In this document: positions 20,518-55,541 of the stretch, piece after piece
How positions within the stretch are numbered: position 1 is the stretch's first letter
Layout: each line of letters starts with the position of its first letter
NCBI RefSeq assembly: GCF_001194135.2
Contig: NC_068983.1
Coordinates: forward strand, 74,055,763-74,119,762
Direction: 5' to 3'
Source of the DNA: Octopus bimaculoides
Taxonomy: Eukaryota
DNA: 64,000 nucleotides
Position numbers and translations under genes: made by a program
Notes under the pieces: model-generated
The model's input: the letters and a program-made list of their open reading frames with translations, nothing else
Told to the model about the DNA's origin: nothing
Database searches by the model: none

Positions 20518-20541
20518 AAGTATAAAGTATACATAGATGTA

Positions 20542-22182: not shown

Positions 22183-22206
22183 AAGTATAAAGTATACATA
22201 GATGTA

Positions 22207-23766: not shown

Positions 23767-23792
23767 AAGTATAAAGTATACATAGTTGTTGA

Positions 23793-24487: not shown

Positions 24488-26683
24488 AAGTATACATAGA
24501 TGTATATAGTGGTCAAAGTATTGCGCTTTATATTTGTATTTGTAGAACTGGAAGATGTCAATTTAATTTTTTAAAGTTAATGCAACTGTAAGAATCCATT
24601 TATCGTAGATGAGATGTGCACGGATTCGAATTTCAGGAAGAACTATTTAACATTCATGTAGTGTATAATTTATGTTGTGTAACTATGCGTATACTCAAAT
24701 AATTCTAATTAATTTATCTACCAACTCGTTTGTAAATATCCCCTTATTTTGATATCACTACTAGAAAGAGCAAAGAATAGTCACAAATGTAAATCCTTGT
24801 TAGATCTTTTATAATATTTAAAAGTTTTATAGAACCTATGTATACATGTTGATAGCACTTCCGATTGACAATTTTTAAAATTCTTTTGTCTATATAATAA
24901 TAGATATAGTTTCTATTATATTTGAGGAAAGCTGTAGCGATTCTTTTGTATAGAAACGGCAACTAAAAGATTTGTGTGTATGGTGTAGCTGAGTCTATTA
25001 TTGACCAATCTAATCTGCAGTTAACTTTGTTTTGTTTAAGTTTGTGTATATAAGTAGCTAATGAGGTAGTATTACTAGTTATACTCAGCTTAAAAGAATG
25101 TATGTGTGCTAAAAAATCTTTAAAATTAACAGAACTCTGTTTGTATACCATACTATTTGAATTATCAGTTAATATAATGATGCATTTGTATATTACATTA
25201 AATCTTCTACATTTGCCTTCTAAAGGACATAATTCTTTATTTTTACATGAACAATTTTTATTTTTATATTTCTGTTCAGAGGTATAATGCCTAATATTAT
25301 TATGATTATTTGTTAAGGTGCATGGTATTATCATTGAATTTACTGTGGGATCGTTTGTCGTAGAGTTAGGTATATTTACTATTTGTGAATTATTATTATT
25401 AGCTTGTGGTGTTGTTATCTAAGGCATGTTGTATATTTTCAAATGCATGATTTTTAGAATTTTGCTGGGATTTTGTGACATCTATATTATTGCTAGGTGT
25501 TCTCGCATTTTGAGTATTAAATGAAATCCTAGTGCTACTGTTTATTTCGTTACTAATATTGTTATTGTTATTTCTAAAGTAATTTTTATATTTATTAATT
25601 TTTCTTCTATTAGAACTGGCGATAATTGATCCTATGTTTGGCGTTGTAGAGAAGGATATTTTAATTGATGATCTGTTAAATATGTGGTGATATTTATGAT
25701 TACTAGGAAAGCTTTTTTTAAAAACTATATTTAAAAACATTTTTGCCTAACTCTTAACGTTTAATGAAAAGGGAGGTGTATACCAAATAATTTCTCTCTT
25801 TCCGCTCTTAAGTAATTTATTACATTTATATATTGATTTAGGGATTTGCGTAATTTTCACTGAGTGTTTTTTTGTTATTACTATATTTAGTAACTTTTTT
25901 TATCATCACGTTTTCTAGATTTGTCGTTGTTTTATAGAAGTTTCTTCGTTTCGTATTGAGTATTATTGTTATAGTTAAGGTTACCTTTATTTCTTGTTTT
26001 AGTATAACATGCAGTTTTGATTGATTCCATCTGTGCGATGTAAATCTTTAGTATCCTTTATATATTTAATGCTTTGTTTTAATCCACTAGCAGCTTAAGC
26101 CTGATTGTAATAGCTTGCATGATTATTAAAAAATTCTTCATTATAAGATAGATCAGATACTCTACAAGATATACTATTTACGATACTATTAAGTAATGAT
26201 ATATGATGATTTGAGTTAATGTTTATATATTTAAGGTATTCGTTGGGTTTATGGAAAGGAGAGTAAGTAGAAGTATTAAGATCTAGAGTTACGTCTAAGA
26301 AATTTGCTTTAGAGCAGCTTTCCTCAAATATAACAAATAAAAATTTTAATAAAATTTTTGTAGTTCTTCTCCCATTTTTCCTATTTTTCTTTTGGATCTG
26401 CCGTTATATACTAGGAGAGTATCATCTCTCTATAATCCTCCCTTCAGAGACGGGAAGTAATGCTTGGTCTCGTATAACAAATATAATCTTACTAAGTCGG
26501 TAATTTGTGCGGAATTGGACAATCTCATGGTGATATCAAATAAATAAAATAAATTATTATTGTCAAAGTGGCACCATAATTTGTCATTGAATTTAATAAG
26601 TGTTTTTCTAGCTAATAGAATAATATCGATTTCTAGTGGTGTAATATCAGTGAGACTTGACTAGAATTATAGTTTTATTTAAT

Positions 26684-27354: not shown

Positions 27355-27397
<43 letters not shown>

Positions 27398-28930: not shown

Positions 28931-28969
<39 letters not shown>

Positions 28970-29018
28970 CATATGTAAATATATAAAGTGTGACGGTTTA
29001 AAAGTTTAAGTATTTAAC

Positions 29019-29110: not shown

Positions 29111-29426
29111 AGAGGGCGAAATTTGTATAATTAATCGAATGTTATTTTAAAAATATGAAAGAATATAGGAAAGGGTGCTTTTTTTTTTTTTTTATAAATT
29201 AAAAGTTACTGTCTTTGATTTGCGTAGATACACTTTTGTACAAAAATTATGGAGTCTGTATATGTATTCTTGGTAAATCTTCCGCAGTAATCCATAATAA
29301 TTTTGTGCTGTATGTATCCAGTATTTTAACTTGCATTCCATATGTGATTCATAAATGTAGAAAAGTGTAAAGTATACATAGATGTATAAAGTAGTCAAAC
29401 TATTGAGTTTTATATTTGTAGAACTG

Positions 29427-31400: not shown

Positions 31401-31762
31401 GTTGCGCCTGTACCGCCATTTATTCCCTCTGAAGGTGTTGTATGAGCAACTTTATTAGTTCACTAGTTTGTTCTGCCATTGTTGTCAAGGTAAAAATAGG
31501 TTACAGTAAAACTCTATATTACATAAAATAACGTATATTCCGTAAAACTTTTGACAAAACAATAATTTAACTGATACTAGAAATACAGGAAGACAGAAGC
31601 TTATGTGCAAAACTGGTTGTTTACCTTTCAAGGATCGTCTTTCTTATCCTATCGGCGACGCCACTTTGCTGTGCTTCTGTCGTTCACTCGCAAAGAAGAT
31701 AACAGTGATATTCCAGATAGGTTTTGTTATGTTTTAATACAGACTTATGCACGTGAAAACTC

Positions 31763-32029
31763 TTTTTCTTTATTGCCCACAAGGGGCCAACACAAAGACA
31801 TGTGGGGATACATAACAAATAAAAGAAGCTTCTTTCATTCCTGTTGGCCCACGAAGTGTCCGACTGCTCAGAATCTGACGAGCTGATTTCTTCCATTTTT
31901 CACTTGGCTTACCCTCCTCTATGCGGAGGGAAAGCACAACTAGCCTGCCCCAAGGTAGCAAAAGCAAAAGCGTTCAAAGAACACAACAATTTAAACAATG
32001 ATAAACTCAACAGCAACTTTAACAATATC
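31763..32029 (-). mobile_element. Unit 9: 267-bp mini-element (leader + first ORF1 codons + terminal tail) with 13-nt TSD
   Basis: MEEISSSDSEQ start fused to tail; CACGTGAAAACTC at 31750-31762 and 32030-32042. Confidence 0.8.
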
Positions 32030-32069
32030 CACGTGAAAACTCGTCCAGCAATAAATGAGTGAACATCGA

Positions 32070-37650: not shown

Positions 37651-38934
37651 AAAATTTTTTATTACCCACAAGGGGCGACATAGAGGGGACNNNNNNNNNN
37701 NNNNNNNNNNNNNNNNNNNNNNNNNNNNNNNNNNNNNNNNNNNNNNNNNNNNNNNNNNNNNNNNNNNNNNNNNNNNNNNNNNNNNNNNNNNNNNNNNNNN
37801 NNNNNNNNNNNNNNNNNNNNNNNNNNNNNNNNNNNNNNNNNNNNNNNNNNNNNNNNNNNNNNNNNNNNNNNNNNNNNNNNNNNNNNNNNNNNNNNNNNNN
37901 NNNNNNNNNNNNNNNNNNNNNNNNNNNNNNNNNNNNNNNNNNNNNNNNNNNNNNNNNNNNNNNNNNNNNNNNNNNNNNNNNNNNNNNNNNNNNNNNNNNN
38001 NNNNNNNNNNNNNNNNNNNNNNNNNNNNNNNNNNNNNNNNNNNNNNNNNNNNNNNNNNNNNNNNNNNNNNNNNNNNNNNNNNNNNNNNNNNNNNNNNNNN
38101 NNNNNNNNNNNNNNNNNNNNNNNNNNNNNNNNNNNNNNNNNNNNNNNNNNNNNNNNNNNNNNNNNNNNNNNNNNNNNNNNNNNNNNNNNNNNNNNNNNNN
38201 NNNNNNNNNNNNNNNNNNNNNNNNNNNNNNNNNNNNNNNNNNNNNNNNNNATGTCGGAGGGACGGCGCAACCATGTCTTGCGAGTTTGTCCCGAACAGGT
38301 AAGGCCCCTCGGTAACACTGCCATGCCAGAGACTTCTGAAAATTATCCAGGGTCTTCGGCCCGAATGTACGTCGGAATAGACTGGGCAGCTGATTTTCGT
38401 CGAGACCTGGGGTTTCCCCTAAAGTGTCATCACATTTCGCCTCTACAAGCCCTCTATAGAAGAATGCGGTGGAACCCCCACCGCAGGCATTGCACAAGCA
38501 ACGGAATAGCAGGAGTGCCTTGCGGCACTCCGTGTACCATGTACCCAACTTCGATCTTCGATTCAACCAGGTTTCCTATCCACTGAAACTATTGAACTTG
38601 GGAAACATCTGCTTCGCCAGCGGAGACCACACCTGTTCACCATCCAGGTAGAACCAAAGATGCCTCAACCTCAGCGCATGTCTGCGCATCAACAGCCAAG
38701 GCATCCAAAGTCCACTTTTTAACGGTTCTTGGCAGCAAATAGAGCGTCTCACAAGCGGTTTCGATCACTTCCACAAAAAGCGGAAAAGCTGTCTTTCCAG
38801 CTTGATCAACCACGAATCAGGGCAAGGAACGACGGTTAGGCGGTAGGTGATGACCGATGCGATGAACACATTGGTTACCTCCGCCCTCCCTTTCAGGGAT
38901 AGCCACCGCCAAGACCAGGTCTTGACTATGTGGG

Positions 38935-40299
38935 TCACCCNNNNNNNNNNGCGATGAACACATTGGTTACCTCCGCCCTCCCTTTCAGGGATAGCCACCG
39001 CCAAGACCAGGTCTTGACTATGTGGGTCACCCTGCTCGATACCTCGGCCCAGTTCTTCTCTATTTGGAGGTTTGGTCCAAACCAAACTCCTAGCAACTTA
39101 ATCGGACCCTCCGTCCAACGTACTACGACGCTATCAGGAGGCATCGACTTGCCTCTCCAGGTGCCGAGCTGCAAGCCGACTGACTTTTCACGTTTAACTT
39201 TTGCTCCTGCCACCGTCTCGTAAACCTCTATGGCCTTTCCTACTATCTGTAGGTGGTCCATTTCGGTTACGATGATGGTGATGTCATCTGCGTAAGCTGA
39301 AACCGATTTTCCACAACCTGGCTGTCTCGGAATGACGCTCAATTTTCGCAGTAATGGCTCAAGAGCCATTACATACAAAATCGGGGAGAGTGGACACCCT
39401 TGACGAACCGAGCGTTTGATGTTGAACGGCTTCGATGAGAAGCCGTTCACCCGAACTACCGAGTCGATGTTATTGTAAATCTCGATGATCCACCTGAAAA
39501 AACCAAGACCCAGACCGAACTGCGCCAGAACGGACACCAGGTAGCGATGATCAACCCTATCGAATGCCTTAGATTGGTCTAAATGGACCAGTGCCCCACC
39601 CTTGCCAGCATCATTATTAAACTCCTCTAAAGTGTATCGTGTAAGATGGAGATTATCCTGGATGGTTCTGCCAGGAACGGCACATGTCTGTGCCTCCCCG
39701 ATCAGACCGTCCGTGACACGCGCCAATATTTTCGATAACACTTTGGCCAAAATTTTCAACTCTGCGTTTAGCAGAGTGATGGGCCGAAAATTATCAATGG
39801 AATCCCCCTTGTTCGGGTCCTTTCTGACAAGCGTCACCACTCCCCGGCGCACAGATCTGGGAATAAATCCGTTCTGCTGCCAGTTCGCGTAGACATTCGC
39901 CAGCATGTGCCCGAACAAGTCTGGCATACTCTTATACAACTCGTAGGGTAAACCACCCAGTCCTGGCACCTTACCCGCACCGCAGCCCGCCATCGCCTCA
40001 ATTACTTCCTCAGGTGTGATCGGCCCTTCACCGCGCTCCGCGTCCAGCCCCGATAGGCGCGGCAGCCCGCCGAGGAAGTCCGTTAGGTCCCTCCTNNNNN
40101 NNNNNNNNNNNNNNNNNNNNNNNNNNNNNNNNNNNNNNNNNNNNNNNNNNNNNNNNNNNNNNNNNNNNNNNNNNNNNNNNNNNTGGGTGAAGTACTCCTG
40201 AAAGGTCTCACACATCTCCTCGGGTTCGTTTATCAACTTACCTTGTTGGTTCGTTAAAGATCGAATTGTAGCATCATTACCACGTTGGGCTTCCACCAC
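38935..40299 (-). CDS. Non-LTR reverse transcriptase domain (L1/Tx1 clade)
   Basis: PG..GLP, FRPITLLNAELKILAK, DQSKAFDRV, VRQGCPLSP, AYADD motifs. Confidence 0.93.
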   Translation of the reverse strand: MVEAQRGNDATIRSLTNQQGKLINEPEEMCETFQEYFTXXXXXXXXXXXXXXXXXXXXXXXXXXXXXXRRDLTDFLGGLPRLSGLDAERGEGPITPEEVIEAMAGCGAGKVPGLGGLPYELYKSMPDLFGHMLANVYANWQQNGFIPRSVRRGVVTLVRKDPNKGDSIDNFRPITLLNAELKILAKVLSKILARVTDGLIGEAQTCAVPGRTIQDNLHLTRYTLEEFNNDAGKGGALVHLDQSKAFDRVDHRYLVSVLAQFGLGLGFFRWIIEIYNNIDSVVRVNGFSSKPFNIKRSVRQGCPLSPILYVMALEPLLRKLSVIPRQPGCGKSVSAYADDITIIVTEMDHLQIVGKAIEVYETVAGAKVKREKSVGLQLGTWRGKSMPPDSVVVRWTEGPIKLLGVWFGPNLQIEKNWAEVSSRVTHIVKTWSWRWLSLKGRAEVTNVFIXXXXG

Positions 40300-40517
40300 T
40301 CGGGCTCATCCTGCGGCCTTGATTCCCTCACAACCCATAGCACGAAGTCTAGCCCTGACAATGCAACCCATGTGTTTGGCTTCGAGGTCGAGGTGCTGGT
40401 TTAATGCCAGTCTCTTGGCCGTCACCTGAGTCGCAGAACCAGTTCTCATTGCTTCTTCTAATTCCTTAACTAAAACTGATACTCTCCTACTCTCTCTAGC
40501 CACTAAACTTATGCTTT

Positions 40518-41835
40518 CTTTCTATTTACCATCGGGACGTCTGGCATGTTCATTCTTCTGATTCGATCTTCTCGTAACTTCGTTCATCAGACATCTCATC
40601 TTTCCTTCTACATACCACTGGGGTGACTGGTATGTTCATTCTTGCCCAACCCAGCATTCCACAGCCCCCTCCGACAATAGGCAGTGCATCCACCCGATGC
40701 CAACAGCTCGTGGAAAGCAAATTCGTGCATCCACCCGATGCCAACAGCTCGTGGAAAGCAAATTCGTGCATCCACCCCTCCGAAATGGTGAGGTGTCACA
40801 CACCGTCGAAGCTCGAAACGATATGCGAAAAACCAGTGGTGATCCCCGGTGGTCATCCACCTGCAGTGGACCAGAGGTCACGACTCACCGGACCTCACCG
40901 AGACGAATGGATCATAACGTACCACGCAACCCCGTCCGGAGCGGGTCTTCACTTACAATTGACGCGGGTCATAACATACCCTGTGTCGGTCAGTCGATTT
41001 TACCAGGAGGCAGGCAATCGGCAGCCCACCAATCACCTCCGGAAGGCCCACGTCTTTCAATCGGGATCAACCCACACACTACATGGTCCCCACCAGACTC
41101 GCTAGAACCGCTACTGGGAAGGGACACATTTAGTTTGTTCATGCGGGGGCATATATTCGGCATGGTTTTTTCAACCTATCCGACATACCTCCCCACACGG
41201 ACGTAAGCACTTTCACCACGCCAAGGTAGTGTCCCAAAGAGTAAAGCCTGGCAGTGCATCCATCAATCAGGCAAAATTCAGTAGATCACCTCACTCGCCC
41301 ATCATCCACCGAATCCCGAATGATCATAACATACCAGGCAAACCCGATGGTGCATCCACCCACTGACTATTGGCGTCCTAGCTGCCAATATACCTTCACA
41401 GGGCAGGCACATAAACCCACCGCCACCAGTCACAGCGACGTATCCGTAGGCCATCGCAGGTGCAATTACTACTCGACAACCGGCCACCGACCGTCTCTCG
41501 ACTCCAATGTTCCAATAGGACACTGCAGGTGTTTACCCCAGCCGTAGCAACCCACACCGATGTTCCAATAGGACACCGCAGGTGAATCCGCTATCGATAA
41601 GAGAGGCCCACTAGCCTAGGGCGGGTGGGCCTCCTGGGGCCCACCCCCTGCAGGGGAACGACCGATGCACTCACCCAACGCGGAGAGATCGGTCAGACCA
41701 CATCTAATCAAGCCCCAGCATATCATAGTGTGGTTGTGACATCGTTCGGTAGAAAGCACACCCACCTGTGACGGAGCCATAGGTGCACCCACCCATGCAA
41801 GGGACAGTGGGTCATAACACATCAGGCCCCACGAA
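40518..41835. other. 1.3-kb GC-rich modular insertion splitting ORF2 of unit 13
   Basis: ORF2 breaks after GAGTCTGTT and resumes at AGCATAAGTTTAG; these are nearly contiguous in unit 19; internal 41-nt and ~25-nt repeats. Confidence 0.75.
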
Positions 41836-44291
41836 AACAGACTCAAATTTATTGGCTCTCTTGAGGACATACCACCATTTATTATTAATAATGGTACCGG
41901 TTAATGCCCTCTGAATCAACAACCTAATCCGATCTCTGTACTCCTTAATCGCCAAAAGGGACGTATTAAGTTTCCAGTAGCCGGAGCCTCTAGTATATCG
42001 CTTACTATATCAAGCCTACAGGTGATCATTTTATGATCACTGTAGCTGACTGGGTAAAACTGTGGACACTTAGCTATATTTCTATCTACTTTTCTAATTA
42101 ACACTATATATGACCTGGAAGATCCGTCGCTATTTGACCAAGTCCATATTGGAGCGTTCGGAAATTCCAACCTATAAGGGTCTGCGAGCTCAAAGCGACT
42201 TTGCAGTTCCAGGAAGCAAGAATTACCTTTTCTAGTAGTTTTTGAGCTAACATAATATACGCGTGCCTCGCAAATTGTGTTAAAGTCACCTGGTACAACT
42301 AAAGAATGTGAAGTACCGAGAAAATTCTCCAGATTTCGAAAAAAAATCACTTTTCCCGGATGGCTGGGGTGCATAATTTGCAACCAGTCTGAAAACTTTA
42401 CCATGGCTGAGCGTCAAGTCCATGACGACCAGCCTACCTTCTGGATCTGAATAAATTAACTTTTTCTCAGAAACCCAGTTTCTTTTTAATAGAACCCCAC
42501 CCCCTAGAAGGACAGCCTGGAGAGAAAAAACTCTCGTAGCCATTCAACAGGGGGAGCAGATCTCTCGGTTCTCTTAATCGGGTCTCTGTAGCAACAGTAA
42601 CATCCAAATCCCGCAACCTGATGTCATAAAGGAAGCAACCTTGCTCCCAGCCTAACATCAGGCCACGCACATTTAAACAACCTACATGAATGTTTGCCAC
42701 TACCTACCTCTGCATCAATGGTTCGGGGTTCCTTCTTCCACTTTTTCTTCCTCCTTTTCCTGGGCTCGTGCCGTATTTGGACGTAGGCCCTCGTAAATAT
42801 AAGGAGAAAAATCCATTCTGAGAGGGCCCATGTCGTGAAAGAATTCAGACTTGATCCGTCCGTAATCCTTCCGGCCTATCCTGTAGATTAGAAAGTTTTT
42901 TGATGTTGTTTTTTCCACTCGTTTGGCAGATGAAATAGCTGCCAAACGGTTTATTAGTCTATTGTTGGACGCCTTGATGGCTATGTACGTGTTTTCTTTT
43001 TCCTTGTCGTTTTTCTTTTTTAAATTTAGTGTGGTGGGGGCGGTCTGTGTCTTTTCTTTTGTTTTTTAGAAGCAGTCGACCACCCCTTCTCTCTATCCTT
43101 CTCTTCACTCTCTTCTGTCGATCTTGGTGTTATCTCTACTTTCGGTGTTGACGCTGGTGTTTCGTTTGTTTCTTCTAATCCTTCTTTCTCTTGTTCTTTT
43201 TCTTTTTCTTGTTCTTCTTTCGGTTTGCATTCCGACCTGATGTAGCCCTTTAACCCGCAATTAAAGCACCTTGGTTTTCTTCCTTCCACAAAAACTATTA
43301 GTCTTTCTTCTCCGCCTACATTTATGATTTCTGCAATTTCTTCAAGTGTTGTGGCTTCTGCTTGAATTAACATTATCAAGCATTGTCCCTTCCAGTGCTC
43401 CTCTTCTTCCACAGAGGCCTGGAGTATAGTTAGTTTGTCCTCCAGGCCCATCGTAATAGCTGCTACTAAACAAGTGGCATCAACTTCTGGGGAGATATTG
43501 ATTATCCTCATCTTTGACGTTCTTCTTCCCATATATACGGGAAGAAGAACCACCTCCTCCGTTCTGAGGGACTCCTAGGAGTAGTTTTTGGCTGCTTTCT
43601 CTGACCTAAACCTTACTTCGACCGTTCCAAATCTTTTACCGCGGTTAATGTATGTAATCTCTGGCCAAATAGGTTTAAAGCATTTTTCTACGATTTTCTC
43701 TTCTGTTTTGTAAATCCTTCCCCCCCCCCCNNNNNNNNNNNNNNNNNNNNNNNNCGCAATGTTGTACGTTTTGTGTGATTCTTCTCTTGTTGACTGTGTT
43801 GGTTGTTTCTTTTGGGGTGACCACTTGAATTTCCGACCCCTCTTTTTTTAATATTGCCATGAATCTTTGCAGATAACTTCGTTCCGTGTTTAACTGTGTT
43901 TCTTTCCTTCCTGCTACCTCGGCGAACTTTTTGGGCGACTACTGCCGGTGAATTTTCTTCCCCCAAAATATTTAGTTCTCTCGGTGTTACTATCGGTGAA
44001 ATTATTTCTTCACCTGCTTCAGACACAGGTGAGTACTTACTTGGTGGAAGCAAAGTAGTTTCCATTTTTTCCCCCACAAAATTGGCTTAAAAGCCACCAG
44101 ATATAATAACAATAATACCCCCGCAGGGAGGAATTTCAACAAGTAGCTTTCACAAAAGTAATTAAATTATCTTTAACAAGATAATAGCAACCACCCACAA
44201 CAGTACTTCAATCGAACAAAACACGGAGGAAAAGCAAAACGTACCAACAGCAGGTGCTTCCACAAGAATGAGAGTATCAAGACGATGTATA

Positions 44292-45955
44292 TTTTTTTTA
44301 TTACCCACAAGGGGCCAACAAAGAGGGGTCATACAATTACATTGGGGACGCATAAAATGTACAATAAAATAAAATACAAAACAAATGAAACGTATGATAT
44401 AATGAAAGATGGATAAATGTAAAGATGGAAATGGTGTTACCCGCCCCATCAGGCAACACCACTTGCTTCATTTCCCCTACACTCCATTATGTCCAACTCA
44501 AATCTCTCTGTCAGTTCGTCAGACCAAATAAACTGTGGTAGCTTCTCCATATCGAGGTTGACATTTCATAATCTACATTATGTCTCTGTATGTCCATCCT
44601 TTGCTGTGCCGATAATAGTAGCACCACAGCATTCATATCTTCTGCGCTAACATGGACCATATTTTCCCATTTGAAAGCTTCTGCAAACAGTTCTTTATCA
44701 TGAATTATACACGCAAAACTTCTATTGGAGGGGGAATTTTTTGAAACACTGTCTGTATGTACTCTCTTCTTTTGTCTTTGTGATGGAGGGGAATGAGAAG
44801 GCTTGGTGTCTGCAAGGCGAGGGTGGGACACAGAGGGTATGAGTGGGCCTTGGGTAGTTGATGTGTGAAGTTCTGAGTGTATTGGACTTGCCTTTTTTCT
44901 CTTCTTTCTCTTTCTTCTCTCTTCCCATTCTTCCTCTTTTTCTGAAATCAATTCCTCCTCCTCCTGTTCTTCTCGAGGCCTCTCCTGCATCTTCTCCTTG
45001 CTGCTGTCTTCTTGCACTTTCTCCACTCTTTTGTCTGGTAGAGGGTGCATTTCTTCCACTCTTTTATCTGGTAGAGAGTATTTCGCTCTCATGTGGCCCT
45101 TCTGACCACATTTGTAACATTGCGGTATCCTGCCCTCCACTCTTACATTCATTACAACTTCGTCCAGAGTTATTGTTTCCACCATCTCTTCTAATGCCTC
45201 ACTTGAACCTTGTACTATCATATTTAGGACCTGGCCTTTCCAGTTTGCACTTTTTAACTTAGTTGCCTGGAGCACCACTACTTTGCCGTCAGTCTCGGCC
45301 AATACAGCTGCCGCTATCCAGGCAACGTCAATTTCCGGAGGAATTCCTTCTACCCATACCCGAGACGCTCTACGTCCTAGGTACGTGGGTAGAAGTACAG
45401 GCTCTTCCTCCTTCAATGAAGTTGCCGCATGCTTCTTCGCCGTGTCTGCGTTTATAAATCTCACTTCTATTTCACCAAATTTCGGCCCTCTGGCAAGATA
45501 TGATATTTCGTGCCAGATTGGCCTCAGCACCTTCTCCACCTGCTCCGTCATCATGTGGTCTATTTTCCCTTTCTTGATTGAGTACGTTTTATACATTATT
45601 GTTCTACTTTTCATCTTTTTTGTGGTTTTGAGCGAAGGGGACACGTTAACGTTGTAACCGTTTCGACTCAACAACTTCTTGTATTTCTCCGTATCAATTT
45701 CCACATTGTCATCTTTTTCTCGGGCGATATTCGTGAACTTCCTCTTATCTAATTCTATATCCATTGCGTCAACAGCCTTCAACAACTCTTCCTCAGATGT
45801 CGACAACCCAAACCCGCTAAAGTCTGAGTAAAAGGAATTCCTTCTACTTTTATTAGCCATGCAAACTCTCAAGGAGAGAAAGCACAGCTACACCGCTGCA
45901 AAGCAGCACGCAAAAAACAAAATAATCCTTGCTGAACGATATTTCGGTATCTCGG
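44292..45955 (-). mobile_element. Unit 14: complete ORF1-only element (leader, intact ORF, structured tail, 21-nt TSD-like repeat)
   Basis: ORF 44511-45872; tail 44292-44463; ATGAGA(G/C)TATCAAGACGATGT at 44268-44288 and 45956-45976. Confidence 0.92.
44511..45872 (-). CDS. ORF1p-like protein, 453 aa, uninterrupted
   Basis: Acidic N-terminal SDFSG..STSEEELL motif, RRM-like core, knuckle CYKCGQKGHMRAKY, extra C-terminal module. Confidence 0.88.
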   Translation of the reverse strand: MRVCMANKSRRNSFYSDFSGFGLSTSEEELLKAVDAMDIELDKRKFTNIAREKDDNVEIDTEKYKKLLSRNGYNVNVSPSLKTTKKMKSRTIMYKTYSIKKGKIDHMMTEQVEKVLRPIWHEISYLARGPKFGEIEVRFINADTAKKHAATSLKEEEPVLLPTYLGRRASRVWVEGIPPEIDVAWIAAAVLAETDGKVVVLQATKLKSANWKGQVLNMIVQGSSEALEEMVETITLDEVVMNVRVEGRIPQCYKCGQKGHMRAKYSLPDKRVEEMHPLPDKRVEKVQEDSSKEKMQERPREEQEEEELISEKEEEWEERRKRKKRKKASPIHSELHTSTTQGPLIPSVSHPRLADTKPSHSPPSQRQKKRVHTDSVSKNSPSNRSFACIIHDKELFAEAFKWENMVHVSAEDMNAVVLLLSAQQRMDIQRHNVDYEMSTSIWRSYHSLFGLTN

Positions 45956-45987
45956 ATGAGACTATCAAGACGATGTCAAAACATGCG

Positions 45988-47055
45988 ATTTCTTTATTAG
46001 GCATAAAGCCCCAAACACAGATGGGGACACCACAAGGACAGACAAGACCACAGTGGGGGCCAAAGAACATAAAACGAATGTAAATGAAATGAAAGTTATA
46101 TAAAAATGAGAAAATGAAATGGACGCACGGGCCCCACTCCCATGCATTACCATTTGAACTGTTATATGTACATTTTACAATTGTTCTCTTTTTCCTTAAT
46201 TTCATACTTTTTTCTTGTCTTTAGTAAAACTTCATTAGTGGTTCAATTTCTCTTAACTCCACTACTGGTGGTAACTCTTTAAATTCCACCTTTACTCCTG
46301 GCGGGTCAACATTATCCCCACACATCTCTTTCAATTTTCTATAGTTTTCTTTTTCGATCACTATTGCCTTTATATCCTCCGCGTAGACGTTTGAAGGCAC
46401 CTTTACTGTTACTATTGAATGTAACTTGATTATTTTTTTCTCTGTTTCAACATTTTTCGGGTACGTTACATAATACCATACTCCTTCTCCTCCTCGTATC
46501 TTCTTTCCTTTCTCTTGGACTTTTGGTTCTCTCTTTTCTTCCTCCCTAACTAGTCTCTCCATCTCCCCTTCATACAGTTGGGTTTCCGACTCTTTCTCCA
46601 CTGATAACTCCACTTTCTTTTTACTTTCTTTTTCCTTCCTACTGCCCTCCTTCACAGTTTCTTTTCTCACCTCTTCTCTCTTCTTTTTCTGCTTCTCTGG
46701 CGGAGAACTCATTCCTCCGCTTCTCCTTTTCTTTTTAGCCATAGTGAATCCCTTCTCCGCTTCTTTTTCTGTTGCCTTGCCCTGCACTACCTGGTCCACA
46801 CTCTCCCGTCTCTCCACCTGTTCTGTTTGTAGCTTCCTTTGGGTGCACTATGCCTTCATGTGGCCCCTTTCTCCACATGTGAAACACACTGGTGGCCTAC
46901 CCTCCACCACGATCCGTAGTCGAGTGTCATCGGGAAGCACGAACTCCTCTGCAATATTATGTAGGTCCGGTAGGGTAATGTGGGTTAGGATTTCTACCCC
47001 AAAACCCCACCATTTGATTCCTTTTGACCTTTCCACCTTAATTATTTCTACCTTG
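45988..47055 (-). pseudogene. Unit 15: 5'-truncated ORF1 element with tail
   Basis: CFTCGERGHMKA (46848-47135); C-terminal ORF 46221-46817; tail 45988-46157. Confidence 0.85.
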
Positions 47056-48177
47056 TCTTTACATTTGTCGGAGGGGATTGGGTAGGTTTGGTGTCTGCAT
47101 GGGGAGGGTGTGGTGAAGAGGGAGAGGGTGGGCATTGGGTGAGTTGGGGCTCACAGGCACTTTCTTCCTCTTTCTATTTTTCTTCCTCTTGACCGTTTCC
47201 CATTCCTTATCCTCTGGTGTTTCTTTTGTCTCTTCTTCTTCCTCTCTCCTTTCCTGTGGTGGCGGCTGTCGCCCCTCTACCATTTTGGTTGATGGAGGGC
47301 AGTTCGCTCTTATGTGGCCCTTCTGACCACATTTGAAGCAGCGCGGTATCCTGCCCTCCACTCTTACGTTCATAACCACTTCGTCCAATGTTATCGTTTC
47401 CACCATCTCTTCCAACGCCTCGCTCGAACCCTGCACTATCATGTTTAGGACCTGGACCTTCCAGTTTGAACTTTTTGACTTCGTTGCCTGGAGCACCACT
47501 ATTTTGCCGTTAGTCTCAGCCAAAACAGCGGCCGCTATCCAGGCAACGTCAATTTCCGGCGGAATTCCTTCTACCCATACCCGAGACGCTCTACGTCCCA
47601 GGTACGTGGGAAGAAGTACAAGTTCTTCATCCTTCAATGAAGTTGCCGCATACTACTTCGCCGTGTCTTCGTTTGTGAATCTCACCTCCACTACACCAAA
47701 TTTCGGCCCTCTGGCAAGATATATTTCTTGCCGGATTGGCCTCAGCACCTTCTCCACCTGCGCCGTCAACATGTGGTCTATCTTGCCTTTCTTAATTGAG
47801 AATGTTTTGTACATAATAGTTCTGACTTTCATACTTTTTGTTATTTTGAGCGGAGGGGTCACGTTAACGTTGTAACCGTCACGCTTCACCAACGTCTTAT
47901 ATTTCTGTGTCAATTTCTACATTTTCCTCTTCTTTTCGGGCAACCGCCGCAAACTTCCTCTTATCGAGTTCCACGTCCATTGCGTCAACCGCTTTCAACA
48001 ATTCTTCCTCAGATGCCGAATACTCAGACCCGCTAAACTCTGAGTAAAAGGTATTCCTTTTACTTTTAGCCCTACCAACTCTCAAAGAGAGGACATACGA
48101 CTACACCGCTGCAAAACAGCACGCAACAAATACAACAATCCATTCTGAACGATATTTCACAAATAATACAAACCCTT
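47056..48177 (-). pseudogene. Unit 16: close paralog of unit 14, 3'-truncated and fused to unit 15
   Basis: ORFs 47897-48085, 47653-47913, 47059-47637 align almost residue for residue with 44511-45872. Confidence 0.88.
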
Positions 48178-48205
48178 ACTGGCGAACTCACACTTTGAAC
48201 ATCGA

Positions 48206-49945
48206 TTTTTTTTTATTGCCTATAAAAGGTAAAACAAAGAATCTTCCATTAACATTACAACACATAGAGACAATACCAACGCGACAAACACAAAATCGGG
48301 GAAATAAAAATACAAAAAGATGAAATCAGAAGAAATTAAAATAACGAATGGTAATATGTAAGAATGAAAAAATAAGAAATGGAAGTGATGTTACCTGCCC
48401 CTTCAAGTAACATCACTTACTTGCCTTTATGCCTGTCCTTCATAATATCTATACCGTATCTTAATTTCAGTTCTTCGTATTCTATATTTTTCGGTAAATT
48501 CTCCATATTGTAATTCACCTTCCATACTATAAAGTCCTCGAATTTTTTGATTTCGTTCAAATGTCTTTCTGTTATTAGAATTACTGTGATTTCTCCAGAC
48601 TCATTCATGATCGTCCACGTCCACATGGACTGTGTCTTTCCATCTCTCCACTATCTCCTGCAGTTCTTTCACTGCCTCATAATACACCAAACATGCATAA
48701 CATTCAGAGAAAGAGGAAGTTTCTAACACATTGTGTGTGGTGTCCTTCTTTTTCTTTTGTTTTCGTGTTGGTGAGAAATGGGTAGGTATAGTGTCTGCAG
48801 GGGGAGGGTGGNNNNNNNNNNNNNNNNNNNNNNNNNNNNNNNNNNNNNNNNNNNNNNNNNNNNNNNNNNNNNNNNNNNNNNNNNNNNNNNNNNNNNNNNN
48901 NNNNNNNNNNNNNNNNNNNNNNNNNNNNNNNNNNNNNNNNNNNNNNNNNNNNNNNNNNNNNNNNNNNNNNNNNNNNNNNNNNNNNNNNNNNNNNNNNNNN
49001 NNNNNNNNNNNNNNNNNNNNNNCTGTTTGTTTTTTAGTATCTCCTGTGTATTCCGCTCTTCTGCTTCTTTGTTCGGTTGAGAGCAATTCGCTCTAATGTG
49101 GCCCTTCAGACCACATTTATAACAGCGAGGGATTCTGCCCTCCACCCACACTCTCAGACTTATGTCGCCTATGGTTATTGTCTCTGCCAATTTTTCTAGT
49201 GTTTCTTTATCGCTTTGGATGTTCATTTGTAATGTTTTCCACGTCCCGTCTTCAGTTGATGTAGCCTGGATAACGGACACCTTTTCCTCACATCCGAGGA
49301 GTGCAGCCGCCGCCACCCAAGCCGCTTCCATATCCGGTGGTATTCATTCTACTCTGACCCTGGAAGTCCTTCTTCCAAAATACATGGGTAGAAGGACTAC
49401 ATTCTCAGTTTCACCGTTTTTATAGCCATCCTTTGTGCTGCCTCTTCCGACTTGAACTGTACTACTATTGAACCGAATTTATTGCCTCGTGAAAGGAATA
49501 TTACGTCTTTCGTTACAGTTCGTAACGCCTTTTCTATGGTTTCAATTTCAATAATTTCCACTTTATTTTTTTCTGCTGCAATTAATTTATACGTAATGGT
49601 TCTTCTTTCCATACTTTCCTGCGGTGGCGACAGTTTCACTTCTCCACCCACTTTCGTTGCCATTTTCTGATATTTCAACATTTTCGTGAGGTCCACTTCA
49701 CATGATTTAACCTCTGCTATTTCTGCAAAGCTTTTCTTCTCCTTCAAAACTTCATCCATTTTGTCGAGAGCCCTAACCAGTTCATCTTCCGAGGATGACA
49801 ATTCTGACCCACTCAGGTCAGAACAGAACATATTTTTTGCCATTTGGTCCAGTTAATTCTCCTCAACACGGAGAAAAAGCACCGCCGTCAAAAGCTTCAC
49901 ACAAAAATTCAAACAGACAGCAAATCACCAATAGCACGCACTGCC
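48206..49945 (-). pseudogene. Unit 17: ORF1-only element with tail and 19-nt flanking direct repeat
   Basis: ORFs 49397-49843, 48723-49331, 48417-48626; AACTCACACTTTGAACATC at 48185-48203 and 49946-49964. Confidence 0.88.
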
Positions 49946-49966
49946 AACTCACACTTTGAACATCTG

Positions 49967-50405
49967 TTTTTTTTTTTATTACCCATGCAGGCTAACATAG
50001 AGGGGACAGAACAAAACATGTGGGACGTAAAACATATATAAAAAAACAGAAATGAATGTTATAACGTATGAAGACATGAATATGATAAAATGGAAATGGA
50101 ACCACTNNNNNNNNNNNNNNNNNNNNNNNNNNNNNNNNNNNNNNNNNNNNNNNNNNNNNNNNNNNNNNNNNNNNNNNNNNNNNNNNNNNNNNNNNNNNNN
50201 NNNNNNNNNNNNNNNNNNTCGAACCATATATTCATGTATTTATTTCTCTTGCTTCTTATTTGGTATTACACACTTGTGATGCCCCTCCACGTTATCAAAC
50301 CCCACAGTTCCAATGCACTTTATGTCCCATTCCACCGAATCCCTCAACAGTTCGTCACTATGCAACATGTAAATCCTACACTTTTTCCTTCTCTTTTTTG
50401 ACTCG
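49967..50405 (-). pseudogene. Unit 18: ORF1 C-terminal module plus tail, fused to ORF2 of unit 19
   Basis: SKKRRKKCRIYMLHSDELL (50240-50405), near-identical to unit 20; tail 49967-50106. Confidence 0.8.
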
Positions 50406-53240
50406 TGATTGGCCCTTCGCAAGACTCCGCATCCGACCCCGAGAGACACTGCAGACCGGCAAGAAAGTCCTCGAGGGCTCTCCCACCACCAGGACCGCCG
50501 TCACCACCGAACAGCTGGGTGCAGTACTTCCGAAAGGCCTCACACATTTTCTCGGGTTCGTTTACCAAAACGCCATTTTGATTCGTCAAAGATCGTATAG
50601 TGGAACGATTTCCTTGCCGAGCTTCCACCACTCGGGCCCATCTAGCGGCCTTGATTCCTTCATTTCCCATCGCACGTAACTTAGCTCTGGCAATACTTCC
50701 CATGTGTTGGGCTTCAAGATGCTGGTTTAACTCCAATCTTTTCACTTTTGCTTGGTCCGTATTACCAGTCCTCCAGGCTTCTTCTAGTCCTTTAACTAAA
50801 CCATCTCCTATTCTACATCCCTTCTTAACTAAACTTATGCTAAACCTAATAGACTCATATTTGATGGCTCTTTTTAGGGCGTACCACTATTTGTTATTAA
50901 TGATGGTACCTGTCAATGCCCTCTGTATTAATATATTGATTCGCTTTCTGTATTCCTCAATCACCAAAAGGGACGTATTGAGTTTCCAGTAGCCAGATCC
51001 CTGACTATGTAACTTATCTATTGTCAGTTTACAGGTAACCAACTTGTGGTCACTGTAGCTGAGTAGAAAAAACTGTGGACACTTAGCTATGGACTTATCT
51101 GTTTCTCTAATTAAAATCATATCTAGATATGTTCTGGAACACCCGTCACTATTTGACCACGTCCATTGTGGATTGTTCGGGTGTTCCAACCTATATGGAT
51201 CTGCTAGCTGAAAGTGACTTAGCAGATCCCGTAAGCCTGGGTTACATTTTCTGTTCATGATCGAGCCAACACAATCTGTGTGTGCCTCACATATTGTGTT
51301 AAAGTCTCCTAACAATACTTGCGAATGCGACATGGCCAGGAACTTGCCCAGGTCACGAAAATATTCACATTGCGGGTCCATAATGTTGGGTGTATAAATA
51401 GCAACTAGCCTGATTATCTTGCCACAACTGAATGTCAGGTCGAGAACGATCAGCCTGCCTTCTGGATCAGAAAAAAAACAACTTTTTCTCGGCTNNNNNN
51501 NNNNNNNNNNNNNNNNNNNNNNNNNNNNNNNNNNNNNNNNNNNNNNNNNNNNNNNNNNNNNNNNNNNNNNNNNNNNNNNNNNNNNNNNNNNNNNNNNNNN
51601 NNGGGGGGGGGGAAGATCTCTTGGCTCCTTTACCCGGGTTCCGTTGCAACAATCACATCCAATTTTCTTGACAAACGAAGCGTCCTTGCTTCCAGCTAGA
51701 CATCAGGCCACGAACATTTACACAACCAATGTGAATAGACATGACTTACCTGTTAATCAGGGCTGTCCGGTGGAGAGGGACCCTCCACCTTTTCTTGATA
51801 CAGGGTCGGAGGTGGCAGGTCTTGGGAAATAGATTGGTTAAAATCCAGTCTCATTACTGACACAGACTTTCTATACGTATTTAATAAAATATTATGAGTC
51901 TTTTTGTCCATTTCATATAGTTCATAATTTTTGTATTTGTCCGACAGTTTTGCTACCCTGGTGGCTGATTTTTTTGTTTTTATCTCTCATTAAATCCTCA
52001 TTGTTACTAAGTAGTGCCACAATCCCTCTGTCTGCTATTTCTTTCCTTGTTGTTTTTGGTTGGACTCTTTTTGCTATCTTTTTTGGTCGTGGTTCTGCTT
52101 GTTTTGGTTGGTTTGCATTTTCTTTTTGCTAGTAACTTTATTTTCTTTTTTTCTTTTTCTTCCTCCTCATCTTCAGATTCCTCCTCGCCTTCCTTACAGT
52201 ATTTTTTTATATGGCCTAGCTGGCCACACAGAAAACATCGGGGTTTATACCCCTCGACAAAAACGTTGAGGAACTCCTCCCCAACTTCTATTTTTTCCGA
52301 AAGCTTTTCTAATACAGCTTGTTCAGTTTGAATAATGAGGTGGACCGTGTGGCCAGTCCAATTTGCCTTTTCAGAGACGGTAGCCTGAAGTAGTTTTATC
52401 TCATCTACTCTTTCTGACAGGACTGTCGCCATCAACCACATAGGGTCGACTTGAGGTGGAACCTTTGGTATCCGTATTTTGGCTGTCTTCATACCCATGT
52501 ATATTGGTTTTAAAATTACGTCTTCTGTTGCCAAGGATTTCACTGAGTGCAATTGTGCAGTTTCGATATTTTTTAGGTGTACCTCGATGGTACCGAACTT
52601 TTTTCCTCTGGCTAGATATGTGATATCCTGCCAGATGGGTTTTAAAGATTTTTCTACCTTATCCTCGCTTACTCGCTCGATTTTTCTTTCTTTTTGGCAG
52701 TATGCCTTGAATATAATAGTTTTTATCTTCTCTGACAATAAAAACTCCTCTGGGGGTTGAACCTTGACAACGCCATCTTGAACTGTAATCATGTCCTTGT
52801 ACATCAACAAATCATTTTTATTCGTCGACAGTTGGCGAGTTCTATCTCCAGCTGCAGACGCAAAACTTATTTTCTGTTTGCCTTCCTCCTTTGAAGGCTT
52901 TTCACCTCGATGTTCCTCTTTGCAACGGGAGTCTTCGACAATAGTGGGAATTCATTTTCAGACGAATCTGAAACATCTTTCAACAATATTTTTTCAACTT
53001 TTTTTGCCTCTAAATCTGTCGAATCCTCGTTAGACGAAGACAAACTTCTTGGCATTTTGCCGGCAATTAATGTTTTCCCCCACGGGGGAAAACACAATAG
53101 TTTTCGAACGAAAACTGTAAAACAAATTTAAACAGCAAATACAACAGGAAATAACACGGAAACAGTCCACAGAAACTACACTTAAGGTACAGACGCACTT
53201 CAGCAATAATACTTCCAGCTCACAGAGACGAAATACCAAT
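50406..53240 (-). mobile_element. Unit 19: bicistronic element, ORF1 + APE + linker, truncated before the RT core
   Basis: ORF1 52867-53097 and 52007-52810; APE 50887-51381 (LLGDFNTIC, WTWSNSDG, SDH, GYWKLN); linker 50406-50745. Confidence 0.88.
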
Positions 53241-55137: not shown

Positions 55138-55541
55138 NNNNNNNNNNNNNNNNNNNNNNNNNNNNNNNNNNNNNNNNNNNNNNNNNNNNNNNNNNNNNNN
55201 NNNNNNNNNNNNNNNNNNNNNNNNNNNNNNNNNNNNNNNNNNNNNNNNNNNNNNNNNNNNNNNNNNNNNNNNNNNNNNNNNNNNNNNNNNNNNNNNNNNN
55301 NNNNNNNNNNNNNNNNNNNNNNNNNNNNNNNNNNNNNNNNNNNNNNNNNNNNNNNNNNNNNNNNNNNNNNNNNNNNNNNNNNNNNNNNNNNNNNNNNNNN
55401 NNNNNNNNNNNNNNNNNNNNNNNNNNNNNNNNNNNNNNNNNNNNNNNNNNNNNNNNNNNNNNNNNNNNNNNNNNNNNNNNNNNNNNNNNNNNNNNNNNNN
55501 NNNNNNNNNNNNNNNNNNNNNNNNNNNNNNNNNNNNNNNNN

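What the first reader, a model, noticed from the sequence alone, without database searches (positions are those of the whole stretch)
44268..49964. 5' ends are shared with array neighbours, not with the closest paralog
Seen: units 14 and 16 are close paralogs whose leaders align up to TGAACGATATTTC (+ strand 45933-45945 and ~48147-48159) and then differ. Unit 14's outermost segment matches its neighbour unit 13's start (44268-44288 vs 45956-45976). Unit 16's matches unit 17's start (AACTCACACTTTGAACATC, 48185-48203 vs 49946-49964). Inference: these are 19-21 nt target-site duplications, an independent confirmation of the junction-insertion model at two further sites with different sequences. 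Targeting would then be positional (next to a tail) rather than strictly sequence-specific.
Basis: partly seen in the sequence, partly recalled or inferred. Interest (0 to 1): 0.72.

Follow-up and report, generated by a model that had tools for sequence, protein, structure and literature searches.

The report
Octopus LINE array target-site duplications
The short sequences shared by neighbouring repeat units are the footprints (target-site duplications) left when one jumping gene (a LINE retrotransposon) landed right at the start of another in an octopus genome. This is ordinary LINE biology, but the same spots are hit again and again, which builds a head-to-tail array.

Summary
GATGTTCAAAGTGTGAGTT (minus strand) occurs exactly twice (48185-48203, 49946-49964). 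ACATCGTCTTGATA[G/C]TCTCAT occurs twice (44268-44288, 45956-45976). About 0 copies are expected by chance.

The window is Octopus bimaculoides. Positions 15-56 kb hold at least 12 gag(CCHC) units, all on the minus strand, from an L1/Tx1-like LINE group with an APE endonuclease. Each motif pair brackets exactly one unit (unit 17, unit 14). The pairs have sharp edges and near-perfect identity, while the sequence beyond them is unrelated. They are target-site duplications (TSDs).

The same pattern recurs elsewhere:
- a 24-nt motif in five copies at 20.5-29.4 kb;
- a 13-nt pair around a 5'-truncated copy at 31.7-32.0 kb;
- an Octopus sinensis array;
- a second assembly of unnamed origin, with a 16-nt motif in four copies.

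Isolated copies carry 16-17-nt TSDs.

The gap at 48812-49022 lies inside unit 17. Its flanks are collinear with single units elsewhere.

Preference for the tail/leader junction is real. Its cause is unresolved: a nick next to an A-rich tail, or recognition of a sequence. The true 5' end of the unit 14/16 family could not be defined.

This is a known kind of event, repeated insertion with a TSD in each tandem junction. Interest is moderate.

The parts
49946..49964 (-). Motif C, copy 1 (GATGTTCAAAGTGTGAGTT). Upstream TSD copy, lying between the tail of unit 18 and the first base of unit 17.
   Evidence: Exact 19-mer, found only twice in the window. Preceded by ...GGGTAATAAAAAAAAAAACA.
48204..49945 (-). 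Unit 17, the inserted element bracketed by motif C. It has a leader, gag with RRM-like core and CCHC knuckle (49124-49083), an assembly gap (48812-49022), a C-terminal region, a 3' UTR, and the tail ...GGCAATAAAAAAAAATC.
   Evidence: tblastn with the unit 14 gag; CCHC scan; gap flanks collinear with units L, M and 14.
48812..49022 (.). Assembly gap inside unit 17, between the zinc knuckle and the C-terminal region.
   Evidence: Paralogous units predict 175-234 missing bases against 211 N. The frame across the gap is unknown.
48185..48203 (-). Motif C, copy 2. Downstream TSD copy, equal to the first 19 bases of unit 16.
   Evidence: The first 8 bases (GATGTTCA) also begin another unit directly after a tail at 32062-32069, so this is probably a native leader start.
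47060..48184 (-). Rest of unit 16 (leader and gag), the target of the unit 17 insertion. It is a close paralog of unit 14 and breaks off near 47060, where unit 15 sequence starts.
   Evidence: 85% identity to unit 14. UniRef gene model P0001 splices units 16 and 15 together.
45977..47054 (-). Unit 15. It begins inside gag. Its tail ...GCCTAATAAAGAAATC is followed by GCATGTTTTG, the first 10 bases of the unit 13 leader.
   Evidence: (tail family D12).
45956..45976 (-). Motif B, copy 1 (ACATCGTCTTGATAGTCTCAT). Upstream TSD copy of unit 14.
44289..45955 (-). Unit 14, the inserted element bracketed by motif B. It carries gag only, with an intact 449-aa ORF (45860-44511), a 3' UTR with a terminal hairpin, and the tail GGGTAATAAAAAAAATAT.
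   Evidence: (zf-CCHC).
44268..44288 (-). Motif B, copy 2 (ACATCGTCTTGATACTCTCAT). Downstream TSD copy, lying inside the leader of unit 13.
37655..44267 (-). Rest of unit 13, a degenerate near full-length LINE and the target of the unit 14 insertion. It has gag (43775-43233), an APE-endonuclease region (about 42700-41840), RT (40299-38935) and the tail GGGTAATAAAAAA at 37655.
   Evidence: RVT_1 E=4e-31; ORFs; endonuclease region homologous to the unit 18 ORF that matches Pfam Exo_endo_phos at E=4e-05 (23.9 bits, just under the 24.5-bit gathering cut-off); best solved-structure match is human L1 ORF2p.
49965..52813 (-). Unit 18 (gag, APE, start of RT, 3' end). Its tail ends next to motif C copy 1.
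   Evidence: (D9, D13, D16, D18).
20518..20541 (-). Motif A (TACATCTATGTATACTTTATACTT). Last of five copies, directly after the tail of unit M and before unit N.
22183..22206 (-). Motif A copy between the tail of unit L and unit M (24/24).
23767..23790 (-). Motif A copy between the tail of unit K and unit L (22/24).
24488..24504 (-). Motif A copy (first 17 nt) directly before the 5'-truncated unit K. It is preceded by non-tail sequence.
29363..29386 (-). Motif A copy (23/24) in non-tail context. It is the end of a roughly 60-nt repeat whose other copy is at 24488-24552.
31750..32042 (-). A 267-nt 5'-truncated LINE 3' end (31763-32029) bracketed by the 13-nt pair GAGTTTTCACGTG (32030-32042 and 31750-31762). 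It was inserted 27 nt into the leader that follows the tail at 32070.

Best explanation
What the sequence is. The window is Octopus bimaculoides. Positions 15-56 kb are a one-way, head-to-tail array of L1/Tx1-like LINE retrotransposons. Their parts are ORF1 (an RRM-like core plus one CCHC knuckle), ORF2 (APE endonuclease plus RT), a small hairpin, and an AATAAA(A)n(TC) 3' end. Many units carry gag only.

What the shared segments are. The 19-nt and 21-nt segments are target-site duplications from two separate insertions by target-primed reverse transcription.
- Unit 17 landed at the very first bases of unit 16.
- Unit 14 landed 10 nt inside the leader of unit 13.

In each case the bottom strand was nicked at the left edge of the motif and the top strand 19-21 nt further on. 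Fill-in then left one copy in front of the newcomer, where it looks like the newcomer's outermost leader, and one copy after the newcomer's tail, where it is the start of the neighbour.

Why the array grows. Every insertion regenerates the site and places a new A-rich tail directly upstream of it. The same site can therefore be hit again, in the same orientation, and the array grows.

Shown versus inferred. Shown: the repeats, their sharp edges, their bracketing of single units, and their recurrence. Inferred: that the endonuclease, like the L1 enzyme, prefers to nick the T-rich strand at or just past an A/T tract, so resident tails create the hotspot.
For: 1. Exact or near-exact repeats with about 0 expected by chance.
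2. Sharp edges. Downstream sequence aligns no better than shuffled sequence, and upstream similarity is only that of LINE tails.
3. Among 15 window leader starts, every isolated short match (13 nt or more) joins units of one neighbourhood, except one 14-mer that includes a tail.
4. The bracketed and neighbouring units belong to different subfamilies (34-53% gag identity). The close paralogs 14 and 16 (85%) do not share the motifs.
5. LINE identity: RVT_1 and zf-CCHC, a match to Pfam Exo_endo_phos at E=4e-05, just under the gathering cut-off, best solved-structure match L1 ORF2p at E=1e-31, and zf-RVT in relatives.
6. Isolated copies of the group carry TSDs of the same size: 17/17 in cuttlefish L002 and 14/16 in O. 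bimaculoides L004.
7. Serial reuse of a site: motif A in five copies, three of them directly after tails, and in L001 a 16-nt motif before E1 and after each of three tails.
8. In the gap-free O. sinensis array L005, element E2 starts with 18 nt identical to the native leader of family E1/E3. E2's own diverged version of that block lies 63 nt further in.
9. A 5'-truncated copy bracketed by a 13-nt pair shows ordinary target-primed reverse transcription at work inside the array.
10. The mechanism is documented for other transposable elements (McGurk & Barbash 2018, PMC5932611).
Against: - Only two copies of the unit 14/16 family were available, so its true 5' end is undefined. The 9 nt (unit 14) and 26 nt (unit 16) between the motifs and the shared leader are unexplained.
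- No empty orthologous site was seen.
- No common nick-site sequence emerges from the eight sites.
- At motif C the two bases before the motif differ (CA against TC). The nick was therefore not inside the A run, which weakens a simple L1-like TTTT/A model.
- Sites A and L001 were seeded next to non-tail sequence.
- Reuse of identical nick pairs three to four times could equally mean that the duplicated sequence itself is recognised.
- Unit 17 contains an unread gap.
Confidence: 0.82

Rival explanations
1. Sequence-specific homing. The insertions are real and the repeats are TSDs, but the sites are chosen because the endonuclease, as in many Tx1-clade LINEs, recognises sequence in the first few dozen bases of LINE leaders or in the duplicated segment itself. 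The neighbouring tail plays no part.
For: - The same pair of nick positions was reused three to four times at motif A and in L001.
- Both of those sites were seeded beside non-tail sequence.
- The first nick lies 10 and 27 nt inside leaders at motif B and at the 13-nt pair.
- Many Tx1-clade families target specific sequences, including other transposons (Kojima 2015, PMC4494074).
- O. vulgaris has recently active L1-Tx1 families (PMC13282606).
Against: - The six duplicated sequences share no motif, and no nick-site consensus is visible.
- Site A is AT-rich non-LINE sequence.
- The suggested homology between window motif B and the O. sinensis motif was not recovered by MAFFT.
Confidence: 0.3
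2. The motifs are native, alternative 5' modules of the families, exchanged between elements by recombination or RT template switching. They are not duplications of the target.
For: - LINE 5' ends are often modular.
- GATGTTCA also begins another unit at 32062-32069.
- In L005 the motif is native to the E1/E3 leader.
Against: - Sharing is confined to immediate neighbours and is 95-100% identical, while close paralogs (85%) lack it.
- Homology stops abruptly after 13-24 nt.
- Motif A is repeated in front of three different leaders and also before a 5'-truncated unit that starts inside gag.
Confidence: 0.05
3. Local DNA-level events copied the junctions: tandem duplication, unequal crossing-over or gene conversion within the array.
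For: Arrays of related repeats recombine. In L005 the Ea-to-E1 and E2-to-E3 junction regions align across the junction.
Against: - The duplicated tract is only 13-24 nt and brackets whole elements of different subfamilies.
- Identity drops from 100% to shuffle level at the motif edges.
- In L005 the paired elements diverge unequally (75% against 88-94%), so this is not one duplication.
Confidence: 0.04
4. The shared segment belongs to the upstream unit. Transcripts read about 20 nt past AATAAA, so each copy carries a piece of its source flank (3' transduction).
For: Every unit ends in AATAAA, and the motifs span the 13-25 nt where cleavage normally occurs.
Against: - No poly(A) follows the motifs.
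- The first copies of motif A and of the L001 motif follow non-tail sequence.
- Units 18 and 17 have different tails but the same following 19-mer.
- The cuttlefish isolated copy has its 17-mer on both sides.
Confidence: 0.03

Closest known systems
Tandem transposable elements formed by double or multiple insertion at one site, such as Drosophila R1 arrays separated by 33-nt rDNA duplications and P-element and jockey dimers (McGurk & Barbash 2018, PMC5932611)
   Same: There is a copy of the target-site duplication in every head-to-tail junction. Neighbours are independent insertions, shown by different subfamilies and different 5' truncations. The site is regenerated by each insertion.
   Different: Here up to four or five successive insertions by different subfamilies hit one site, and several sites are chained into a roughly 40-kb one-way array. 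There is no single target sequence as there is for R1. No sign of later expansion by unequal exchange was seen.
Tx1-clade (L1-Tx1) LINEs with target preference, such as Tx1L in Tx1D, Keno in U2 genes and crocodilian Tx1 families in Mariner or LTR elements (Kojima 2015, PMC4494074)
   Same: APE-type LINE with RT closest to L1 ORF2p, zf-RVT in relatives, an ORF1 with a CCHC knuckle, TSDs of about 13-24 nt, and insertion into other transposons.
   Different: Clade membership was not tested by phylogeny. The targets here are the starts or junctions of related LINEs, not one conserved sequence.
Human L1/Alu insertion into A-rich tails of resident elements (L1 endonuclease TTTT/A preference; from general knowledge, not tested here)
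   Same: New copies land next to a resident A-rich tail in the same orientation, and the TSD begins at the tail.
   Different: Octopus tails are very short (AATAAA plus 0-10 A, often ending in TC). The nick can lie up to 27 nt downstream. At motif C it is outside the A run.
Drosophila telomeric HeT-A/TART/TAHRE arrays
   Same: One-way head-to-tail LINE arrays that mix autonomous elements with gag-only partners.
   Different: The octopus array is interstitial, has TSDs, and shows no telomeric repeats. Drosophila elements add to chromosome ends without TSDs.

Membership tests
Non-LTR (LINE) retrotransposon, APE type | Reverse transcriptase of the non-LTR type | tested here: met
   RVT_1 E=4e-31 in unit 13. 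Best solved-structure match is human L1 ORF2p at E=1e-31, ahead of R2 at 1e-20.
Non-LTR (LINE) retrotransposon, APE type | Apurinic-like endonuclease upstream of the RT | tested here: inconclusive
   Exo_endo_phos E=4e-05 but 23.9 bits, just under Pfam's 24.5-bit gathering cut-off, in unit 18 (50887-51381). The homologous region of unit 13 is 71-79% identical, but the unit 13 ORFs gave no Pfam hit themselves. Relatives in L001 carry Exo_endo_phos next to RVT_1.
Non-LTR (LINE) retrotransposon, APE type | Variable 5' truncation, an A-rich 3' end and flanking TSDs | tested here: met
   Truncated units K and 31763-32029. AATAAA(A)n tails. TSDs of 13-24 nt.
L1/Tx1 superfamily | ORF1 with an RRM-like domain plus a CCHC knuckle, and ORF2 ending in a zf-RVT-type cysteine motif | tested here: inconclusive
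   The CCHC knuckle scores E=7e-4, just under the Pfam cut-off, and 10 intact gag CCHC motifs were found. The RRM fold was not tested. zf-RVT was seen only in relatives because the unit 13 C-terminus lies in a gap.
L1/Tx1 superfamily | Phylogenetic placement of the RT inside the Tx1 clade | not tested
   No reference set of clade RT sequences was available. L1-Tx1 families are annotated in O. vulgaris (PMC13282606).
Tandem transposable elements by multiple insertion | A TSD copy inside each tandem junction and at both outer ends | tested here: met
   Motifs B, C and A and the 13-nt pair. L001 has four copies, including both outer ends.
Tandem transposable elements by multiple insertion | Neighbours are independent insertions | tested here: met
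   Different subfamilies, different 5' ends, and unequal divergence.
Strictly site-specific LINE (R1, Tx1L or Keno type) | One conserved target sequence at all insertions | tested here: not met
   Six unrelated duplicated sequences at six sites.
Telomeric LINE array (HeT-A/TART type) | Terminal position and addition to ends without TSDs | tested here: not met
   Non-array sequence lies on both sides (1-14 kb and 56-64 kb). No TTAGGG repeats. TSDs are present.
3' transduction | The transduced flank is followed by a poly(A) tail | tested here: not met
   No A run follows any motif copy.

The most novel reading that the evidence does not exclude
Octopus genomes may host a guild of L1/Tx1-like LINEs, autonomous elements plus gag-only partners that share their 3' hairpin. 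These elements would home to the tail/leader junctions of their own kind. They would thereby build self-reinforcing, one-way interstitial arrays: a safe-haven strategy like that of the Drosophila telomere elements, but without a chromosome end, and conserved across cephalopods.
Probability: 0.3. Interest if true: 0.6.

Novelty: new member of a known kind. Interest (0 to 1): 0.38.

Why it matters
The result explains an odd-looking pattern, leaders that match the neighbour rather than the paralog, as ordinary insertion footprints. It also dates the order of events: units 14 and 17 arrived after units 13 and 16.

It shows that head-to-tail LINE arrays in cephalopods grow by repeated insertion at regenerated sites and not by DNA duplication.

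If the junction preference proves to be active targeting, these elements would be a tractable case of a LINE that finds a harmless niche inside its own relatives.

It also flags annotated octopus 'CCHC-type domain' proteins (for example A0A0L8G4Z0) as gene models that splice across two transposon units.

Tried and rejected
  - The unit 14 ORF, P0001, P0002 and P0135 are not on record for locus look-up.
  - A gag search of JGI metagenome contigs found no relative.
  - Gag homologues in the protein collection are all 49% identical or less.
  - A Logan contig (L006) held only a gag core without ends.
- An exact scan for the 19-mer in metagenome contigs gave one unrelated GC-rich coding contig, a chance match.
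- I suspected that window motif B is homologous to the O. sinensis motif AACTGAATACTCGTCAT, which would make B native to the unit 13 family. MAFFT did not align them, so I dropped the claim.
- A telomeric reading was rejected because there are no TTAGGG repeats and the array has flanks on both sides.
- An early BLAST of 'L004' mixed two records, because L004 and L005 share one file. It was redone per record.
- Pfam found nothing in the two ORFs of the 4.8-kb AT-rich insert. My impression that it is Penelope-like is unverified.
Full report
**Organism and setting**

The protein search with the unit 14 ORF returned two UniRef entries from Octopus bimaculoides. One of them, A0A0L8G4Z0 (P0001), is 100% identical, exon by exon, to window segments 47772-47152 and 46817-46224. 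The window is therefore O. bimaculoides draft sequence with 15 N gaps.

tblastn with the unit 14 protein finds 26 gag segments between 15.3 and 55.8 kb, all on the minus strand. Ten intact gag CCHC knuckles lie on that strand.
- unit 18: about 52813 to 49965
- unit 17: 49945 to 48204
- unit 16: 48203 to about 47060
- unit 15: about 47054 to 45977
- unit 14: 45955 to 44289
- unit 13: 44288 to 37655

**What the units are**

- Unit 13 is a degenerate near full-length element with gag, an endonuclease region and RT (RVT_1 E=4e-31).
- Unit 18 carries an ORF that matches Pfam Exo_endo_phos at E=4e-05, scoring 23.9 bits against a 24.5-bit gathering cut-off. That ORF is 71-79% identical to the corresponding part of unit 13.
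- Among solved structures the RT is closest to human L1 ORF2p (E=1e-31) and further from R2 (1e-20).
- Relatives in other cephalopod assemblies carry Exo_endo_phos, RVT_1 and zf-RVT.
- O. vulgaris is annotated with recently active L1-Tx1 families (PMC13282606).

I therefore treat these as L1/Tx1-like APE LINEs. Clade placement by phylogeny was not done.

Units 14, 17, L and M have gag, a K/E-rich linker, a further C-terminal region and a 3' UTR, but no endonuclease or RT. All units end in a short hairpin followed by AATAAA and 0-10 A, often followed by TC.

**The gap**

The gap at 48812-49022 lies inside unit 17. Its left flank matches units L, M and 14 at 22751, 21106 and 44826. Its right flank matches the same units at 22926, 21282 and 45060. 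So 175-234 bases are expected where 211 N are written. The flanks are collinear with one unit. The frame across the gap is unknowable. Both copies of the 19-mer lie in read sequence more than 600 nt from the gap.

**The observation**

Expected counts are 0.02 and 0.00. The homology between units 14 and 16 (85.3%) ends at 45945/48158.

Read on the minus strand, the junctions are:
- unit 18 tail ...AATAAAAAAAAAAACA | GATGTTCAAAGTGTGAGTT | GGCAGTGCG... (unit 17)
- unit 17 tail ...AATAAAAAAAAATC | GATGTTCAAAGTGTGAGTT | CGCCAGTAAGG... (unit 16)
- unit 15 tail ...AATAAAGAAATC GCATGTTTTG | ACATCGTCTTGATAGTCTCAT | CCGAGATACC... (unit 14)
- unit 14 tail ...AATAAAAAAAATAT | ACATCGTCTTGATACTCTCAT | TCTTGTGG... 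(unit 13)

After each motif, the two sequences align no better than shuffles.

**Interpretation of the two pairs**

Each pair brackets exactly one element (unit 17 and unit 14). That is the signature of a target-site duplication. The upstream copy merely looks like the newcomer's outermost leader. Unit 17 therefore entered at the first bases of unit 16, and unit 14 entered 10 nt into the leader of unit 13.

The bracketed and bracketing units are distant subfamilies (34-53% gag identity). The close paralogs 14 and 16 do not share the motifs. This is the opposite of what family-specific 5' modules would give.

**More cases in the window**

1. TACATCTATGTATACTTTATACTT occurs at 20518, 22183 and 23767, each directly after a tail and before a different leader (units N, M, L). 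Its first 17 nt occur at 24488, in front of the 5'-truncated unit K. It also occurs at 29363. The copies at 24488 and 29363 are preceded by the same roughly 60 nt of non-tail sequence. The site was therefore seeded outside a tail and then reused at least three times with the same boundaries.
2. A 267-nt 5'-truncated 3' end (31763-32029) is bracketed by GAGTTTTCACGTG, 27 nt into the leader that follows the tail at 32070.

Among the 15 leader starts compared all against all, every isolated short match joins units of one neighbourhood, with one exception. That exception is AAAATCGATGTTCA, shared by the junctions at 32070 and 48204. I read it as a family tail ending (AAATC) followed by a shared native leader start (GATGTTCA). 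This reading is an inference.

**Other genomes**

- L005 is Octopus sinensis CM016867.1, gap-free. It is another one-way array with tails at 648, 4183, 9330, 14626 and 19900.
  - Element E2 begins with CAACTGAATACTCGTCAT. This is identical to a block 31 nt inside the leader of E1, and its last 13 nt are identical to the start of the 5'-truncated E3, which belongs to the same family as E1 (94% over 103 nt).
  - E2's own diverged version of that block lies 63 nt further in.
  - E2 therefore inserted 4-7 nt into E3 with a 13-nt TSD.
- L001 is an ENA assembly of unnamed origin whose LINEs are about 70% identical to a cuttlefish copy. It has three full-length elements of two families head to tail. 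CTCTTCGAC[G/A][C/A]GCCA[G/A] lies before the first element, in non-tail sequence, and after each of the three tails.
- Isolated copies show what a normal TSD looks like in this group: 17/17 nt in Acanthosepion pharaonis (L002) and 14/16 nt around a gag-only unit in O. bimaculoides (L004).

The 19-21 nt of the finding fit this range.

**Mechanism**

The shown facts fit target-primed reverse transcription with staggered nicks 13-24 nt apart. Multiple insertion at one site, with a TSD left in each tandem junction, is documented for R1, P elements and jockey (PMC5932611).

Insertions here cluster at the junctions. At least eight events fall within 0-27 nt after a resident tail, in units of 1.7-6 kb. 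This cannot be chance or differential retention inside a dead array.

My preferred cause is an L1-like preference of the APE endonuclease for the T-rich strand at or just past an A/T tract. Each new tail would then recreate the hotspot next to the regenerated site, and the orientation would be fixed. This is inferred, with modest confidence.

Against a simple version of that model:
- The two bases before motif C differ between copies, so the nick was outside the A run.
- Sites A and L001 were seeded without a tail.
- No nick consensus is visible.

Recognition of leader sequence, as in many Tx1-clade elements that target other transposons (PMC4494074), remains a live alternative.

**Rivals to the TSD reading**

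Native alternative 5' modules, local duplication or gene conversion, and 3' read-through each fail on sharpness of edges, restriction to neighbours, unequal divergence, or the absence of poly(A) after the motif.

**What remains open**

- The true 5' end of the unit 14/16 family, and the origin of the 9 and 26 nt between the motifs and the shared leader.
- Whether unit 16 plus unit 15 is a nested insertion with a deletion or a single chimeric copy.
- Empty orthologous sites.
- The cause of the junction preference.

No other copy of the unit 14/16 family could be reached with the tools.

**Verdict**

This is a known kind of event in a new host and LINE group, made somewhat more interesting by the repeated reuse of sites that builds long one-way arrays in at least two octopus species.

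Noticed in passing
window 20518-20541, 22183-22206, 23767-23790, 24488-24504, 29363-29386: A 24-nt motif (TACATCTATGTATACTTTATACTT, minus strand) is present five times. Three copies lie directly after LINE tails. This indicates at least three successive insertions by different subfamilies at one regenerated site.
   Followed up: yes
window 24553-29369 (minus strand): A 4.8-kb AT-rich insert (about 30% GC) is bracketed by a roughly 60-nt direct repeat (29370-29428 and 24488-24552; 52/58 identical with one 6-nt indel). Its two ORFs gave no Pfam hit. My impression of a Penelope-like element is unverified.
   Followed up: partly
window 29400-29804 (minus strand): A fragment of an LTR-retrotransposon RNase H domain (RT_RNaseH_2, E=2e-10) breaks off just upstream of the 60-nt repeat. 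It is also in minus orientation, like everything else identified in the array.
   Followed up: partly
last ~17 nt before AATAAA of every unit, e.g. window 44304-44316, 48219-48230, 46000-46012; L005 and L003 tails: A 3-4 bp hairpin ends directly before AATAAA in 19 of 20 tails (shuffled mean 10.2, maximum 17 in 2000 shuffles). The stems covary: GCCC/GGGY, GCCT/AGGT, GGGC/GCCT, TGGC/GCCA, GGCC/GGCC. It is shared by autonomous and gag-only units and is probably the 3' recognition element that lets gag-only units be mobilised in trans.
   Followed up: partly
window 46224-47772: UniRef A0A0L8G4Z0 ('CCHC-type domain-containing protein', O. bimaculoides) is a gene model that splices the gag of unit 16 to the C-terminal part of unit 15 and skips a stop codon. 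It is a transposon chimera, not a host gene. A0A0L8GL55 (P0002) matches 54338-56010 at only 79-89%, so a very similar array or haplotype exists elsewhere.
   Followed up: partly
window ~47054-47062: Unit 16 breaks off after its linker, and unit 15 starts inside gag, with no 3' remainder of unit 16 after the tail of unit 15. This is either a nested insertion followed by a deletion or one chimeric copy made by template switching.
   Followed up: no
window 44511-44870, 20687-20989, 22415-22641, 48610-48810, 50228-50383, 53417-53687: A region of about 100 aa downstream of the K/E-rich linker is conserved among gag-only units and also appears near the 3' ends of unit 18 and the unit at 53.4 kb. It is absent from the full-length O. 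sinensis elements and has no Pfam match.
   Followed up: partly
window 3828-4207, 5239-5578, 34405-34793; L004 8039-9255: A repeat of about 380 nt (90-92% identical between copies) occurs outside and inside the array and twice in L004. It is probably one of the abundant octopus SINEs.
   Followed up: no
L003 (JGI metagenome 3300045642, contig Ga0486131_03187): A metagenome contig carries the 3' half of a closely related LINE (RT 59% identical). It ends ...GGCCAATAAAAGAAATC and runs straight into an (ATT)n microsatellite. This is cephalopod-like host DNA in a metagenome.
   Followed up: no
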